A stretch of DNA of 63,208 nt, the filler included, from Octopus bimaculoides (Eukaryota), in assembly GCF_001194135.2 (NCBI RefSeq). It is 5 parts of 4 records of this genome, joined end to end, with 100 filler letters (N's around TTAATTAATTAA, not from the genome) between each part and the next. Parts side by side here need not be neighbours in the genome. Positions count along the whole stretch, not along the records: positions 1 to 22,226 come from NC_068986.1; 4 more parts are not named here. One strand, 5' to 3'. Shown piece after piece: positions 11,900-22,226 of the stretch. The translations under genes and the position numbers were made by a program. Within the stretch, counting starts at the first letter, position 1. Every line of letters begins with the position of its first letter. The notes under the pieces are model-generated. The model made no database searches. It was not told the DNA's origin and worked only from the letters and a program-made list of their open reading frames with translations.

Positions 11900-14422
11900 T
11901 GTAGACTGCATTGTATATTGTCTAAGTAACATAAATGAAAGCTTAACCTAACGTTAGTTTTTAGGCAGCTGGTGATCACATATATTTTTCTCTCACATGA
12001 AATATAATTTTAGAAGTTATGAACTTCATTGTATTATTAGTTTATTAGCTATAATGTAGCAATCTTGTGCTCGGATAGCACATATACCTGTAATAATCAT
12101 ATTTACTTCTTACAGGTTAAACTTCTTGAATGTTTTACATATTTTGACAGTTCCAAAAATAGCTTGTAATTGTAATTTCTTAATTAGCTGTATCCTTTCT
12201 ATCAGGTTGAGTAAAAAGAAAGCAACGTTTTGAAACATGAAATTCATCACAATATATTTCAACAACGAGGAAATTTTATTCATCAAAATAAGTAGCATTA
12301 TAATCAATGCATTTTTGTCAACGAGCGACAAGTTTGTTTATTTCGGTAACATGAAAATCTGGAGTTCTGGAACTGATGAACTCTTTGAACGAATTTTCAA
12401 CATCGGTTTAATTTTTGAACTCCTCCTCTCGCTGGAAGCCATCAAGGTGCTTGGAAAAGTGATTGTCGGTAGAAGAAAGGCCTAGGGAATAAGCTGGGTA
12501 ATTTCGTGGCCAAGTTTCCTCAACATCTGGAGCGCCATTAGAGAAACGTGCGTCGAGCATTGTCATGAAAAATGATTGGTCCTCTTCTGTTGACCAGTCT
12601 AGGAGTACAGTCTTCCGTTCATTTTGGCAATTCCATGACAATATGTTTCTGCAGTAATGGTTTTTGCGGGTTTTAAGAAGTTGTATTGGATGAATCCAGC
12701 AGTACGCCACCAAACAGTCATCATAACCTTCTCTTTGAAGAACTCGGATTTAGGGAAGATTTCCGATACTTCATTTTGGTCCCACCACTGCCAAGAACTT
12801 TTTATATTATTGTACAGAATCCACTTTTCATCGCAAGTTACAATACGGTCGAGAAATGGATCAGTCTGGCTACGGAGAAGAAGCGACGAGCATATTTCAT
12901 ATCTGTACATTTTCTAATTTTCATTCAAATCTGTGCTGCCCATTTGTCGAGCTTTTTGATTTTCCGATCGCATGCAAATGGTTGCAGGCAGTTTACTGCC
13001 TAACTTGAAGTTCTTTTGCTAGTTCATGAGTGGTTTTACGTGGATTCTTCTCAATGACGATCTTTAATTGACCATTATCGATGACAGATGGGCGTCCACT
13101 ACGCTCATGATCTTCAAGGCTCAGGTCTCTACTGCAATATCGTTTAAACCATTTTGGAGCTGTCCACTGATTGGTTATTTCCACAACAAACGTTTCGTTG
13201 ATATCGCAAGCAGTTTCAGCTGCTTTACGTTCTTTTTTGAAATTGAATAGCAAAATTTTCTCGAAAATCGCGCATTGACAGTTCCATTTCAGATGACTGT
13301 AACAACGATGAAAAAAGTAATGTTAATTTATTGATGTATTTGGGAAAATCTATAACTGTATTATGAGAAAATTGCAAAAAATGTTTTGAAAAATACTAAA
13401 CTCTGCAAAAATTCTTCATGGTCCAAAACGCTGCTTACTTTTCATTCAGCCTGATAATTTATGAAGGTAAGATAATCAAGACTGAAGCCAGTAAACCTAG
13501 TTGCATAACCAAGTGCCAAAAACTTCACTTATAAACGTAAAGCTATATAATCTGATAGGAGTGTTTACTGATTTCTCATTAGTTTGATACAGATTATTTT
13601 ATAAGCAGAAAGCCTTTCATTTGCTGCTACATAGTTGTACAACTTCTCCGGGTGTGTATCCCTGGTCATCTGTCAAAGAATACTTTTCGCGGATCTCCTT
13701 TCTAACTTTCATGATATAAACATGATATTTGGATACACTTCGATGCTGGGTGTCTGTAGATCGTATGGATAAGATAAAATGCTGTTTCGTGTAATGTGAA
13801 GTTTCTGCATCCTTACTCTTATTTTAAGTTGAGATAGTCAATATCGTTATTCATGTAGAAATTTTGGGAGATGTTAATAGTTTTCAGGTTTTCACATCTC
13901 AGGTTTGGATCTCATGTAGCATCCATGCTATCGAAATGTTAGTGTGATAATTGGTACAGAAAACACATTATGAGTCACAAGTTTTATAGTATTTAGAGAT
14001 GATAATATATTTTAATCAAAGTATTATGTTCTTGGTTACTTATTCCCTAGTACGAAACTTACCATGTGACATATTTTCATCAATACATAAGTACCAAAAG
14101 CATTCCTCGTTTGATATCTGAGAAACAGTCACCCATTATTTGTGGCATTGCTAAACTGGTTTGTAGTTTCCATGGTTTTACAATTATGAAGGAATATTTA
14201 TCTTGACTAAATTCCATTCCTATATCCTTTGAGTAAGCTGTAACCACATCAAGATTCTTCTTCATGCCATTCTTATACTTAGCATATGCTTTCAAGTCAC
14301 CACATGGAAAATATGAGATAAGTTTATTGCTCTAACTTCCTTTGAATCGATTACATACTGTTCAGATTTCCCTTGCACAAAGGATAAATGATCCACTTTA
14401 TCATAAAAAGATTGTCTCACTG
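11900..14422 (-). mobile_element. degenerate R4-clade RLE retrotransposon, interrupted by mariner
   Basis: RT remnant MKAYAKYKNGMKKNLDVVTAYSKDIGMEFSQDK (14080-14295). An ALGYA remnant lies near 13500 and the C-terminus ERIQLIKKLQLQAIFGTVKICKTFKKFNL* lies at 12110-12199. The left boundary is uncertain. Confidence 0.65.
12202..13454 (-). mobile_element. full-length mariner element with TIRs and TA TSD (pseudogene)
   Basis: The left TIR tcaggttgagtaaaaagaaagcaacgttttgaaacatga matches the reverse complement of the right end, tcaggctgaatgaaaagtaagcagcgttttggaccatga (7 mismatches). TA flanks both ends. Remnants KWAAQI, RIVTCDEKWILYNN, KVMMTVWW and HDNAR. Length 1253 bp. Confidence 0.92.
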
Positions 14423-14495
14423 GTATGTATGTATGTATGTATGTATGTATGTATGTATGTATGTATGTACGTACGTATGTATGTATGTATGTATG
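14423..14495. repeat. (TATG)n microsatellite between two R4-clade copies
   Basis: Direct reading. Confidence 0.95.
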
Positions 14496-14980
14496 CCATT
14501 ATTAGGTTTTATTTCAACATTTCTTGCCAATACAGAAACTAAATCCATTGATCCTTCATTGGAATTTCAGTAACATCAACAGGGTAGTTTTGCATATATG
14601 TGTTTATGTGTAGTATTTGGAGTCAATACGTGTGTAGATTTGCATGTTTTGTTTTACGTATGTATTTTCATGCACATAGTTGCATATCTAGACATGCAAA
14701 TGTATACTTAAATGATAAACTTCTGAAAAGTATATCAGATTTTTACAGTTCCAGTGATGGCTTGGATCTGTAGTCTCCGAATCAGCCTTTTTCTTTCTGG
14801 TTATCAGATGCCTAATCTCTGAAGATTGGTATTTAGGCAGTGTGTGCCCCTAGAATTACAGGTATAAGCCTGTACTTGTAATCTGGGTAGAGTAACTGTA
14901 GACTTCTCAATAGGTCAGCGTATATATTTGCATTTTGGCTAAACTTTAGCTTTATATTAATATCCACCGGGTAGCTGATT
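14496..14980 (-). mobile_element. 5'-truncated R4-clade RLE retrotransposon (CATA-associated family)
   Basis: Minus strand EISYPVDINIKLKFSQNANIYADLLRSLQLLYPDYKYRLIPVILG...LIRRLQIQAITGTVKI..FQKFII*, plus a 3' UTR homologous to 53949-54150. CATA repeats lie on both sides. Confidence 0.85.
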
Positions 14981-15320
14981 TAATGTATGTACGTATGCAT
15001 GTTCATACCCAGGTTCGTTTGTATGCATGTATGCATGCATGCATGCATGTATGTACAGACCCACGTACACATGTATGTATGTATGCATGCATAGTTGTAC
15101 AGATACCTCCATACATGTATGTATGACTATATATATATGTATATGTGCATGCATGTATGCATGCTTGAATGTATGCATGCTTGTATGTATGTATGCATGC
15201 ATGCATGCATGTATGTATGTATGTATGTATGTATGTATGCATGCATGTATGTATATATGTATGTATGTATGTATATATGCATGATGTATGTACATGTATG
15301 TATGCTCGTATGTATATGTC
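14981..15320. repeat. (TATG)/(CATG)n degenerate microsatellite
   Basis: Direct reading. Confidence 0.9.
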
Positions 15321-15475
15321 TTCTTTGAATTCTACTTATAGTAAAAAAGGACTATTTCTAACTAGGAAATAAAGTTTCATGGGTAGAATTTAGATCACAA
15401 GAAGTACGATTAAAATCCATACTGAATTCCAAAAAGCATGCGACATTTTCTCTGTTCCACTAGTAGACTGAAGTT

Positions 15476-15695
15476 AAGGCGTCGAGCTGGTAGAAACGTT
15501 AGCACGCCGGGCGAAATGCTTAGCGGCATTTCGTCTGCCGTTACGTTCTGAGTTCAAATTCCACCGATGTCGACTTTGCCTTGCATCCTTTCGGTGTCGA
15601 TAAATTAAGTACCAATTATGCACTGGTGTCGATATAATCGACTGGCCCCCATTCCCCCAAATTTCGGGCCTTGTGCCTAGAGTGGAAAAGACTAA
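15476..15695 (+). mobile_element. SINE family A, full length with perfect 12-bp TSD
   Basis: aggcgtcgagctggtagaaacg...cgggccttgtgcctagagtggaaaag. TAGACTGAAGTT occurs at 15464-15475 and 15696-15707. Confidence 0.9.
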
Positions 15696-16548
15696 TAGAC
15701 TGAAGTTGTAGAACACGAGTTAAATTCTCTTTTCGTTTATTTTTCTAAAAACACAGCATTCCCATACTATTACACGAACATTTATTAACAAAACTAACCG
15801 TACCATTGACTATAAAGTGTGTATGATTATCATCCATTATAGATTACAATCTGGAATTCGAAGAAGTTGTCCATAAATATTCTCTTTCTCACCTATTTCG
15901 AAGGAAATATTCACCTAGGTTGGCCGCCAAAACAGTTCAAAATTTCCCTTAAAATTCTTGTGAATAACTAAATCACTGATTTGCGGCTTTTCTTTCGATT
16001 TAGTTGTTCACTTACATATCAGTAAGATATTGAAAATAAATGCATTTTCATAACTCTTTGTCCACTGATATAGCAAACAATCGTTTAGTTTTGGTTCATA
16101 CTTTTACATGCACACCTTTAAAGGAAATTACAAATGCTATAAGAAACAGTTATATAAGTTTTCACCGAAATTAACGAATAAATGTTACGTGCATTATCTT
16201 TTCTTGAATTATGGGAATTGTTCCTATCAGAAAAGCATTGGTTTCTAACAAATAAACAAAATTCCATCGCTGGAACTGCATAATAAAAGTGGTATATACT
16301 ACATGTTGAACTTCACATCTTGTGTTACATACACACTCTGGCATTTTATAGCTGTACGAAGCAAAATATATTCAGATGATCGTTTTTGCCCTGCATAGAG
16401 ATTATATTAGAAAAGCGTGTGTTAGTTTAAGTCTAGGTTTTCTAGATTGTTACTTAGACACTAATAAACAGGCAAATATCTCAAACAAACGGTATACATG
16501 TGAAAATAAAAAGTAGGGACGCTTAGGTTACGAAGCAGTTTTGTGTGT

Positions 16549-16620
<72 letters not shown>

Positions 16621-16982
16621 CATTTATATATGGAAACAGTACTAACACCAAAAGGTAATAATCATATACAAATTAATATGCAGGATTCAAATGCTGTATC
16701 GTGTAATGTGAAGGAGATATTAATTCATGTAGAAATTTTGGGAGATATTAATATGAATATTTTGTTAGAAAATTGAATACTGCGTTATCACTTTGATAGA
16801 TCCTCTCACAAAGGCGATTGGTGCATAAAAATCACGCGAATAGACTGTAACATAAAAAGATTCGTCCGTCATAGGCGCCAGACCTGCTATATGACGTGAT
16901 TTCATTCTACTGGAAATCATCAGTAGGTGTCCGGTTACCCCATGCCAATCAAAACTCGCTACTGTATAGACACACACGCACG

Positions 16983-21301: not shown

Positions 21302-22226
21302 TTAGGTCATCCCATAAATAATGTGGTTTTTAATACTTTTATTTTTCAAAATTAAGAGAAACAATGTTCTTTTTTAATCTAAAATATACTCTTCATTTTC
21401 TACAATGCTCTTCCATCTTTCTGGTAGACTTGCAAGGCCCGCTTCCAAAATTCACTTGTCCATGATGAAAAATACTCCTCTAGTACTGTTCTGACCTCGT
21501 TTACATAATTCATATTTTTCCGTCCAAATGATTTTGAAGACTGCAGAATAAATGATAATCTGATGGGGAAATGTCCGGCGAATATGGTAGGTGGGGGCAT
21601 CGTTTCCCATTCAAAATGCTCCAGTCTTTGGAATGTCATCCTCGCTGTATGTGGCCGGGCATTATGCTGATGGAAGAACACCTTTCGTCATGAAACCAAA
21701 GATAGTCTTTTTCCTTCTAGCGTTGACTTGAGCCGCTCAAGCTGCTAACAGATCTCCTTTGTTATCGCTTGATTTGGGCTTAAAAGTTCAAAGTGGACTA
21801 AACCTTTCATATCCCACCAAACGGAAAACAACATCTTACGTGGGTGAAGCCTGGGTGCCGGTGTTTCTCCTTTTCTTACCCACTGTCTTTAGCGCTTGAC
21901 ATTTTTATAGAGAACCTATTTCTCGTCACCAGTCACTATTCAGTTAAAAAAAATGTTCATTCGTGAGACTTGACAACAAAGAAGAACACACGTTCACTCT
22001 CTGCACGCGATTAGACTCGGAAAATTTGTGAGGAACCCATTGACCCAATTCGGTGACTTTTCCTATCCACACAGATGTCGATGAATGGTTGAATGACCAA
22101 ATCCAAGCTTCTCTGCTAGTTCTTCAACAATTACGATGGAATTTTGTTCTACCGAGATTTGAAGATCTCGTCGAGCTTTACAGATTTTCCCGGACGAAGC
22201 TCGTCTTCTAGGCTGTAGTTTCCGGC
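21302..22226 (-). mobile_element. mariner element (second family), one TIR visible, runs into a gap
   Basis: TA followed by TIR-like ttaggtcatcccataaataatg at 21302. Remnants HQHNARPHTAR, a WVPHKF-like segment and EDELRPG. Confidence 0.85.

What the first reader, a model, noticed from the sequence alone, without database searches (positions are those of the whole stretch)
11900..15000. R4-clade retrotransposon family apparently targeting (CATA)n microsatellites
Four copies of a related RLE family have their 5' truncation junction directly against (CATA)n on the element strand: 5111, 14422, 14980 and 54470. Two also end in CATA-like repeats at the 3' end (14496, 5362). At 14423-14495 a single (TATG)n run separates two copies stacked head-to-tail, the same geometry as the Dong-like pair in (TAA)n at 52 kb. 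A 5' flank comes from the target rather than the tail, so this points to sequence-specific insertion. R4-clade Dong elements are known to target TAA repeats; I know of no described (CATA)n-specific RLE family. Such a family could both exploit and help seed the abundant ATAC repeats in this genome. Caveat: ATAC repeats are very common here.
Basis: partly seen in the sequence, partly recalled or inferred. Interest (0 to 1): 0.85.

Follow-up and report, generated by a model that had tools for sequence, protein, structure and literature searches.

The report
Dong-like retrotransposons stacked in (CATA)n repeats
Several dead copies of a restriction-endonuclease-type LINE retrotransposon sit head-to-tail inside CATA microsatellites, which fits repeat-specific insertion: a known habit of this group, here with a repeat unit I found no description of.

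Summary
The core observation holds, with corrections. On the minus strand, 15.3-11.3 kb reads: degenerate (CATR)n array | copy B (14980-14496) | (CATA)18 | copy A1 (14422 onwards, split by a mariner at 12200-13457) | copy A2 (~11860-11345) | SINE. A fourth fragment, C (5181-5362, + strand), lies downstream of a >450 bp (TACA)n array.

B and C end at the same nucleotide, followed by CATA x18 and CATC x3.5. A1's RT homology starts within 15-27 nt of the (CATA)18.

- The 5111 junction is not verified: 68 bp there match nothing.
- The cited peptides are not in this piece.
- A1 and A2 are not demonstrably the same family as B and C.

External support is strong. In another animal's assemblies, a full-length and a truncated copy of an R4-like family are each flanked on both sides by (CATA)n in sense orientation. 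Sister families there are flanked by (CTTA)n, with stacked copies.

A Logan contig reproduces the B-(CATA)n-A1-mariner arrangement at 82% identity, so it is old and not an assembly artefact.

Verdict: microsatellite-targeting Dong-like LINEs with a (CATA)n target. This is a new variant of a known kind. The genome-wide test is still undone.

The parts
14982..15315 (-). Degenerate (CATA/CATG/CGTA)n array upstream of copy B in element sense. Five degenerate units (14982-15001) touch B's 5' end. A 16-nt interruption follows, then a ~300 bp array.
   Evidence: TRF rows 15020-15315; degenerate-unit scan 14982-15001, 15070-15089 and 15184-15283. The sequence upstream of the array (15316-15470) does not resemble an R4 3' end (read directly).
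14496..14980 (-). Copy B. A heavily 5'-truncated R4/Dong-like LINE: the last ~90 codons of the RLE/ORF (broken by stops and frameshifts) plus a ~205 bp 3' UTR ending ...AAACCTAATAATGG.
   Evidence: tblastn 14979-14845 to P0014 aa 735-779 and P0016 aa 83-127; translation; 3' UTR homology to copy C.
14423..14495 (-). (CATA)18 microsatellite between B's 3' end and A1's 5' end. It is B's tail, the residual target, or both.
   Evidence: TRF: period 4, 18.2 copies, 97% matches. The related locus L012 has only 5 units at the same place.
13458..14422 (-). Copy A1, proximal part. A 5'-truncated R4-like LINE running from the RT palm motifs through the thumb, a deleted linker and a decayed RLE.
   Evidence: tblastn with RT of L002, L016, P0013 and P0014 from 15-27 nt after the junction to ~13729; 14340-14064 matched; P0001 76% identical.
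12200..13457 (-). Mariner (Mos1-type) DNA transposon inserted into A1's RLE coding region. TA duplication; 36/42 terminal inverted repeats.
   Evidence: Pfam HTH_48 8e-07 and Transposase_1 4e-17; TIR alignment; second copy at 3118-3707, 86% identical.
11861..12199 (-). Copy A1, distal part. The ORF end ...LQLQAIFGTVKICKTFKKFNL* has its stop at about 12119, followed by a 3' UTR whose end is unresolved.
   Evidence: tblastn of the C-termini of L002, L016 and P0014 across the mariner site; alignment with B's ORF end; no significant UTR similarity to B, C or A2.
11345..11860 (-). Copy A2. A third stacked R4-like fragment with RLE C-terminus IEVSWSSDVNI...SISGTVKHTKDS* (11853-11587). It starts at the same codon as copy B. 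The 3' end is unresolved (candidates ~11478 or ~11345).
   Evidence: tblastn 11838-11587 to P0016, 55%, E 3e-22; 5'-end alignment; 3'-end tests.
11108..11338 (+). tRNA-derived SINE lying tail-to-tail against A2. It is not part of the LINE, but it bounds the stack.
   Evidence: Three copies aligned: 290-489 (-), 11108-11338 (+), 15474-15700 (+).
5181..5362 (+). Copy C. A 3' UTR-only fragment of the B family, ending ...AAACTGAATAATGA.
   Evidence: blastn 5181-5374 against 14655-14478, 71%; alignment; 5113-5180 not assignable.
5363..5376 (+). CATCCATCCATCCA, a short degenerate CATA-type tail of copy C.
   Evidence: Alignments.
4646..5112 (+). (TACA/ATAC)n array in the same sense as copy C, containing an 88-N assembly gap. 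It ends 68 bp upstream of C's first demonstrable homology.
   Evidence: TRF 4646-4970 and 5067-5112; N run 4976-5063.

Best explanation
The region is a pile-up of dead, 5'-truncated copies of R4/Dong-like LINE retrotransposons. These have a single ORF with reverse transcriptase followed by a CCHC knuckle and a PD-(D/E)xK restriction-like endonuclease. The copies inserted one after another into a (CATA)n microsatellite.

Inferred mechanism, by analogy with R2 and Dong:
1. The element's protein recognises the repeat.
2. Its RLE nicks the (TATG)n strand.
3. The nick primes reverse transcription of the element RNA, whose 3' end carries or runs into (CAUA)n and can pair with the target.
4. Reverse transcription usually aborts early, giving 5'-truncated copies.
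5. The 5' end is joined back into the repeat.

Each insertion leaves CATA repeats on both sides, always CATA on the element's sense strand. These are fresh targets, so later copies stack head-to-tail (B, then A1, then A2).

Later events: a mariner split A1, a SINE landed next to A2, and the microsatellite between B and A1 changed length (5 versus 18 units in two genomes).

Shown:
- Identity of the fragments, their order and their orientation.
- The fixed 3' terminus of B and C followed by CATA-type units.
- A1's RT starting at the repeat.
- The age of the arrangement.
- In other genomes, R4-like families flanked on both sides by (CATA)n or (CTTA)n.

Inferred:
- That the window's own family chooses (CATA)n actively.
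- The nick and priming steps.
For: - Fragments are RLE-LINE derived. tblastn to full-length relatives with Pfam RVT_1 plus C-terminal CCHC/PD..E..K motifs. The best PDB matches of relative P0014 are R2 proteins, E 4e-27.
- B and C share one exact 3' terminus followed by CATA x18 and CATC x3.5.
- A1's RT homology begins 15-27 nt from the (CATA)18.
- B has CATA-type repeats on both sides. The 300 bp upstream array is not the tail of another detectable copy.
- In all CATA-adjacent cases the repeat reads CATA on the element strand: B, A1 and C in the window, and L015 and L016 elsewhere.
- Controls: 0 of 18 ends of other repeats in the window lie within 200 bp of a perfect CATA array. A random oriented junction abuts one with P of about 1.5%.
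- L016 is a full-length 3.9 kb element between (CATA)23 and (TACA)7(TACC)35(CATA)n. L015 is a 5'-truncated copy, 97.8% identical, at a different locus between (ATAC)~66 and (CATA)~58.
- In those same assemblies, other families are flanked on both sides by (CTTA)n (L002-L004), and stacked copies are separated by (CTTA)n (L006, L013). The flank motif is therefore family-specific, not a property of the genome.
- L012 reproduces B-3'end/(CATA)5/A1/mariner at 81.6% identity over 1.46 kb.
Against: - Only four decayed copies are available from the window's own genome.
- Copy C's 5' junction is unresolved.
- A2 has no clean CATA array at either end, and A1's 3' end is not defined.
- A1 and A2 cannot be shown to belong to the B/C family. 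Amino-acid identity among B, A1 and A2 is 33-45%.
- The (CATA)n-flanked family found elsewhere (P0029) is no closer to the window copies (45%) than the (CTTA)n families are (50%). It supports feasibility, not identity.
- The window is very rich in CATA-type repeats, and the pattern was picked post hoc.
- No empty-site comparison was made and no biochemistry exists.
Confidence: 0.7

Rival explanations
1. Tail only, no targeting. (CATA)n is simply the family's own 3' tail, as many LINEs carry a microsatellite tail. New arrays are seeded and expanded from tails. A 5' junction next to CATA arises only because one copy happens to lie downstream of another copy's tail.
For: The (CATA)18 that touches A1's 5' end is also B's 3' tail. 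The 3' association is the cleanest part of the pattern. Copy C's 5' junction is unverified. The array length is labile, 5 versus 18 units.
Against: B's upstream array (~300 bp) and C's upstream array (>450 bp) are not preceded by any R4 3' end. In the relatives, a full-length element (L016) and elements L002 and L003 abut long arrays at their 5' ends, and the far flanks of those arrays are unique sequence. Landing by chance directly behind another copy's tail, in the same orientation, is itself improbable (about 1.5% per junction).
Confidence: 0.15
2. Passive co-accumulation. Both the LINE debris and the CATA repeats pile up in a gene-poor, repeat-rich region. The adjacency is coincidence, sharpened by post-hoc selection.
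For: The window holds about 60 tandem-repeat rows and many TE fragments. Waldo-A and Waldo-B near CA repeats are explained this way in the literature (PMC3812793).
Against: The junctions are exact to the nucleotide, and the sense orientation is always the same. Other repeats in the same window do not touch CATA arrays (0 of 18). The same geometry recurs in unrelated genomes with family-specific motifs.
Confidence: 0.08
3. Assembly artefact. Short-read scaffolding collapsed or mis-joined microsatellite-bounded pieces, creating false juxtapositions.
For: Six N runs lie next to simple repeats, one of them (4976-5063) inside C's upstream array.
Against: There is no N gap between 11.1 and 15.3 kb. 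An independent Logan assembly (L012) has the same B-end/(CATA)n/A1/mariner order.
Confidence: 0.02

Closest known systems
Dong (R4 clade, RLE-type LINE; Bombyx, Anopheles, Biomphalaria, ostracods, cnidarians)
   Same: Single-ORF RT followed by a restriction-like endonuclease. Insertion into a microsatellite, head-to-tail stacking within the repeat, and frequent 5' truncation. 'Dong-R4' is the label given to abundant, partly young LINEs in octopus genomes (PMC13282606, PMC8967140, PMC9115989).
   Different: Dong's reported target is (TAA)n (PMC3812793, PMC7998251). Here the repeat is the tetranucleotide (CATA)n. Relatives found here use (CTTA)n.
Waldo (R1 clade, APE-type LINE of insects)
   Same: It targets (ACAY)n microsatellites, the same repeat class as (CATA)n (PMC3812793).
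   Different: Waldo uses an apurinic/apyrimidinic-type endonuclease at the N-terminus and belongs to an unrelated clade. The window copies encode the C-terminal PD-(D/E)xK type, so any shared target is convergent.
R2 (28S rDNA-specific RLE LINE)
   Same: Closest solved structures to relative P0014 (R2 proteins, E 4e-27). Same RT-then-RLE order, and it is the source of the TPRT mechanism assumed here.
   Different: R2 recognises one site in 28S rDNA through N-terminal zinc-finger and Myb domains. No rDNA is involved here.
HERO and Togen/NeSL-related microsatellite-specific RLE LINEs
   Same: Some HERO families are microsatellite-specific, and Togen is (TG)n-specific (PMC4640811). HERO is also reported in cephalopods (PMC10294476).
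   Different: Different RT clades by published phylogeny. I could not test which clade the window copies fall in, so HERO is not formally excluded.

Membership tests
RLE-type LINE (R2/R4/HERO/NeSL/CRE group) | Reverse transcriptase domain of non-LTR type | tested here: met
   Window 14408-13729 aligns to the RT of L002, L016, P0013 and P0014. Those relatives hit Pfam RVT_1 (1e-24 and 7e-29) and R2 structures. The window fragment alone is too short and decayed for Pfam.
RLE-type LINE (R2/R4/HERO/NeSL/CRE group) | CCHC knuckle plus PD-(D/E)xK endonuclease C-terminal to the RT | tested here: met
   Alignment A4 shows CRLC..H..C, KPD, E-x-S-C-P-A-D-x-N and EK motifs in 37 relatives. Window copies B, A1 and A2 retain the distal half in decayed form. 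The motifs were read from the alignment; no profile or structure test of the nuclease fold was made.
R4/Dong clade | RT phylogeny groups with R4, Dong and Rex6 to the exclusion of R2, HERO, NeSL and CRE | not testable with these tools
No reference R4, Dong or HERO sequences were obtainable.
R4/Dong clade | N-terminal divergent Myb/SANT-like domain without zinc fingers (PMC7998251) | tested here: inconclusive
   All window copies are 5'-truncated. The full-length relatives L016 and L002 have an N-terminal ORF part with no Pfam hit at E below 0.05. It is 38% identical between them, against 53-56% for RT and RLE.
R4/Dong clade | Insertion into rDNA or a microsatellite | tested here: met
   CATA arrays at B's two ends and at A1's 5' end. 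Arrays on both flanks in L015, L016, L002, L003 and L013.
Dong sensu stricto | (TAA)n target and tail | tested here: not met
   B and C end in CATA/CATC units. No (TAA)n lies at any junction in this piece. The only hint is L011, whose contig starts with (ATA)17.
Waldo (R1 clade) | N-terminal APE-type endonuclease | tested here: not met
   The copies carry a C-terminal PD-(D/E)xK-type region instead.

The most novel reading that the evidence does not exclude
R4/Dong-like LINEs of cephalopods and other invertebrates may form a radiation of closely related families. Each family would home to its own tetranucleotide microsatellite: (CATA)n, (CTTA)n and possibly (CTGA)n. The repeat unit at the element's 3' end would match the target, so specificity would be set largely by pairing between the RNA tail and the nicked repeat, with help from a fast-evolving N-terminal domain. 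It could then switch by small changes. That would make these elements a natural, RNA-tunable system for site choice in target-primed reverse transcription, and a major sower of tetranucleotide repeats in these genomes.
Probability: 0.3. Interest if true: 0.7.

Novelty: new variant of a known kind. Interest (0 to 1): 0.45.

Why it matters
Microsatellite-homing LINEs are a known 'safe harbour' strategy. The described targets are few: (TAA)n for Dong, (TG)n for Togen, and (TC)n, (TTC)n, (AC)n and (ACAY)n for APE-type elements.

A (CATA)n-homing RLE family, next to sister families homing to (CTTA)n, would be useful in three ways:
- It gives a set of close relatives with different targets, suited to asking what sets target choice in RLE LINEs. 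That question bears on R2-based gene-insertion tools.
- It would help explain why ATAC-type repeats are so abundant and so often TE-associated in this genome.
- It would warn annotators that 'Dong-R4' copies in cephalopods are not randomly placed.

It does not change the general picture of how these elements work.

Tried and rejected
- Pfam on the short window fragments: no hit, too short and decayed.
- The search for homologous proteins with a repaired B peptide and with A1's RT ORF: one hit each. Only the search seeded with the intact relative P0015 opened up the family.
- Scans of viral contigs by protein profile and by the B/C 3'-end DNA motif: nothing.
- Search for further B/C-type 3' ends next to the other CATA arrays in the window: none.
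- Tested whether 5113-5180 belongs to copy C: no.
- Tested whether the 3' UTRs of A1 and A2 match B: no. Only a weak terminal similarity for A2 (z = 3.6 in a restricted window, with an equally scoring alternative site).
- Considered that B's or C's upstream arrays are tails of further copies: the sequence beyond them does not resemble an R4 3' end.
- Considered that the external loci come from the window's species: they share no SINE or mariner with it, except L012.
- Six literature searches for a (CATA)n/(ACAT)n-specific RLE LINE: none found. Repbase itself could not be consulted.
- Pfam on the GC-rich ORFs at 6.3-8.8 kb and on the ORF at 21.4 kb: no hit.
Full report
WHAT THE PIECE IS

The 22.2 kb piece is AT-rich animal DNA (GC 0.30-0.38 over most of it). 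It has six short N gaps, about 60 tandem-repeat rows and many transposon fragments. It is not prokaryotic, so the ORF list is mostly noise from microsatellites. Relatives of its retrotransposon fragments come from a pelagic octopod (Argonauta hians) and from unnamed ENA and Logan assemblies. 'R4-Dong' LINEs are reported almost exclusively in cephalopods among molluscs (PMC10294476). A cephalopod origin is therefore likely but not shown.

CHECKING THE OBSERVATION

The (TATG)18 run at 14423-14495 is real.

Copy B. On the minus strand, 14979-14845 encodes the distal part of a restriction-like endonuclease. It reads ISYPVDINIKLKFSQNANIYADLLRSLQLLYPDYKYRLIPVILGA. tblastn aligns it to aa 735-779 of the 825-aa protein P0014 and to many shorter relatives, at up to 60% identity. 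The rest of the ORF end and about 205 bp of 3' UTR run to 14496.

Copy A1. Directly on the other side of the microsatellite, the minus strand encodes reverse transcriptase. 14340-14064 matches the YxDD and following motifs (GDLKAYAKYKNGMKKNLDVVTAYSKDIGMEFSQDK). With more sensitive settings, RT homology starts 15-27 nt from 14422. So a 5'-truncated copy does begin at the repeat.

Copy C. 5181-5362 on the + strand is 71-77% identical to B's 3' UTR. Both stop at the same nucleotide:
- B: AAACCTAATAATGG, then CATA x18
- C: AAACTGAATAATGA, then CATCCATCCATCCA

They belong to a copy elsewhere.
- The (ATAC)n array upstream of C ends at 5112, but 5113-5180 has no detectable similarity to B (z = -0.5 against shuffles). 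The '5111 junction' is unverified.
- The downstream 'copy' is two copies. A1 runs from 14422 to an ORF end...LQLQAIFGTVKICKTFKKFNL*, at about 12119. It has lost roughly 580 nt internally. It is split by a mariner at 12200-13457 (Pfam HTH_48 and Transposase_1; TA duplication and 36/42 inverted repeats).
- A second RLE C-terminus, IEVSWSSDVNIYFKVSEK...SISGTVKHTKDS*, lies at 11853-11587. This is A2.
- A + strand tRNA-derived SINE (11108-11338) lies tail-to-tail against A2.
- The 3' UTRs of A1 and A2 do not align with B or C. The three C-termini are only 33-45% identical to each other. Only B and C are demonstrably one family.
- A1's 3' end and both ends of A2 are not cleanly defined and show at most decayed repeat remnants.

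IS THE ADJACENCY MORE THAN CHANCE?

With a strict rule (3 or more perfect units), CATA arrays cover 1.8% of the piece. With a degenerate rule they cover 2.7%. A random oriented junction falls in or just behind a same-sense array with P of about 1.5%.

B has such repeats on both sides and A1 has them on its 5' side. In all cases, and for C's array and tail, the repeat reads CATA on the element's sense strand. None of 18 ends of the other recognisable repeats (three SINEs, two mariners, two other repeat pairs) lies within 200 bp of a perfect CATA array.

The array upstream of B (15020-15315) is not the tail of another copy. The sequence beyond it does not resemble the family's 3' end. The same holds for the array upstream of C.

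The sample is tiny and was chosen post hoc. Within its limits the pattern is not random.

INDEPENDENT CONFIRMATION OF THE ARRANGEMENT

A 1447-bp Logan contig (L012, SRR11869391) aligns to window 14448-13048 at 81.6% identity. It starts with the B-type 3' terminus TGAATAATGA. Five CATA/CATG units follow, then A1's first bases (ACCAGTGAGA...), and it continues into the same mariner insertion.

The nested arrangement therefore predates about 18% sequence divergence, whether L012 is an ortholog in a related species or an old duplicate. It is not an assembly artefact. The microsatellite has since changed from 5 to 18 units or the reverse.

EVIDENCE FROM RELATIVES

A search seeded with an intact relative (P0015) found 80 C-terminal ORFs. 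I fetched the DNA around twelve proteins and four metagenome hits.

(CATA)n-flanked family. L016 holds a 3.9 kb full-length element (2861-6759) with (CATA)23 immediately upstream. (TACA)7(TACC)35(CATA)n lies immediately downstream. L015, from another assembly and another locus, holds a 5'-truncated copy 97.8% identical to it. That copy lies between about 66 ATAC units and about 58 CATA units. In both loci the repeat is CATA on the sense strand, as in the window.

(CTTA)n-flanked families. In the same assemblies, other families are bounded by (CTTA)n on both sides:
- L002, full length (3039-7330).
- L003/L004, where the upstream array differs by 10 units between two assemblies.
- L006 and L013, which hold two stacked copies separated by (ACTT)11 and (ACTT)23.
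- L010, L011 and L017, which end in (CTTA)n.

The far sides of the upstream arrays are unique sequence, so those arrays are targets, not tails. The flank motif goes with the family, not with the genome. That is the signature of sequence-specific insertion.

These assemblies share no SINE or mariner with the window. Their CATA family (P0029) is no closer to the window copies (45%) than the CTTA families are (about 50%). The closest intact relatives of the window copies are P0016 and P0015 (55-58%). The external data therefore show that R4-like LINEs can be, and are, (CATA)n-specific. They do not prove it for the window's own family.

MECHANISM

The relatives have Pfam RVT_1. Alignment A4 shows a CRLC..H..C knuckle and KPD / E-x-S-C-P-A-D-x-N / EK motifs downstream. 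Their best matches among solved structures are R2 retrotransposon proteins (E 4e-27).

The likely cycle is that established for R2, with steps as in the best explanation: recognition of the repeat, an RLE nick in the (TATG)n strand, and priming from that nick on an RNA 3' end that carries or reads into (CAUA)n. Early termination and joining of the 5' end back into the repeat follow. This is inferred, not shown.

Between a CATA-flanked and a CTTA-flanked full-length element, the N-terminal region is 38% identical against 53-56% for RT and RLE. That fits the published idea that a divergent N-terminal Myb-like domain sets Dong's target (PMC7998251), but it is not a test.

COMPARISON WITH WHAT IS KNOWN

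[quoted passage not shown] (ACAY)n is the target of Waldo, an APE-type R1-clade element (PMC3812793). Togen is (TG)n-specific and some HERO families are microsatellite-specific (PMC4640811).

Dong-R4 LINEs are known to be abundant and partly young in octopus genomes. The papers I read say nothing about where they insert (PMC13282606, PMC8967140, PMC9115989). Six full-text searches found no (CATA)n- or (CTTA)n-specific RLE family. Repbase could not be checked.

I could not place the copies by RT phylogeny. 'R4 clade' remains an assignment by motif style and by the literature's labelling, and HERO is not formally excluded.

VERDICT

This is best described as a new variant (a new target repeat) of a known kind of element. 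It is of moderate interest to transposon specialists.

Noticed in passing
window 14975-14985 and 11855-11865 (minus strand): Copies B and A2 begin within a few nucleotides of the same codon, the E/I-x-S of the E-x-S-C-P-A-D nuclease motif. Random 5' truncation should not repeat a breakpoint. Possible causes are microhomology-guided 5' joining or amplification of a short ~500 bp non-autonomous derivative.
   Followed up: partly
L012 (Logan SRR11869391) against window 13048-14448: The same nested arrangement (B 3' end, CATA repeat, A1, mariner) occurs at 81.6% identity, with 5 repeat units instead of 18. It is an old ortholog or duplicate, and it shows the length lability of the microsatellite.
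   Followed up: yes
window 12200-13457 (-), 3118-3707 (+), 21400-21681 (-): Mos1-type mariner copies. The first is complete-looking with TA duplication and 36/42 inverted repeats, but its ORF is broken. The second is 86% identical. The third ORF carries a HQHNARPH-like DDE tail by eye, but gave no Pfam hit.
   Followed up: partly
window 290-489 (-), 11108-11338 (+), 15474-15700 (+): Three copies of a ~225 bp tRNA-derived SINE (GGC..GAGCTGGCAGAAACGTTAGCACGCC...GTTCAAATTCC...GGCCTTGTGCC). One lies tail-to-tail against R4 copy A2. None touches a CATA array.
   Followed up: partly
window 6300-8800: A GC-rich block (0.45-0.51 against about 0.33 around it, with strong GC skew) carries long minus-strand ORFs of up to 254 aa. 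By eye it looks like a Penelope-like or other retroelement remnant, but Pfam found nothing.
   Followed up: partly
window 16685-16755 against 13777-13879: A ~70 bp piece of A1's RT-thumb region is repeated at 96-97% identity, with a 38 bp deletion, right next to a (CA)34 run. It is far more similar than A1 is to L012, which suggests a recent local copy or conversion. The adjoining 16748-16927 is repeated in inverted form at 19089-18898 (69%).
   Followed up: partly
L007 6854-7099 and L014 6995-7184: Two copies have proteins 84-89% identical to the (CTTA)n family. Their 3' UTRs are cut short at different points and followed by (CTGA)49 or (CTGA)10 instead of (CTTA)n. No CTGA is seen at L007's 5' side. 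This could be a tail/target switch or a secondary event; it is unresolved.
   Followed up: partly
L015 3826-3840; window 5105-5118 and 14975-14990: Three independent 5' junctions read ...CATACATT|AA... (L015, copy B, and the end of the array upstream of copy C). In L015 the extra bases are not part of the element, as comparison with L016 shows. This may reflect a preferred second-strand cleavage or joining position within the repeat.
   Followed up: no
L016 2861-3851 against L015, and L002 3039-4058 against L003/L007: In both the CATA and the CTTA families, a copy lacking almost exactly the first ~1 kb (the N-terminal ORF part) exists. L003 and L007 share the same start (CGATATAAATTTGGG). This may be a recurrent truncation point or a shorter subfamily.
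   Followed up: no
window 15026-15125: The degenerate CATA/CATG array upstream of copy B has a 44-bp higher-order period (2.3 copies, 82% matches). This points to duplication of a compound unit rather than simple slippage.
   Followed up: no
L011 1-51 and 4134-4161: A metagenome contig with a full-length R4-like ORF starts with (ATA)17 and ends with (CTTA)7. Its two ends therefore carry different repeats, one of them the classic Dong (TAA)n type.
   Followed up: no
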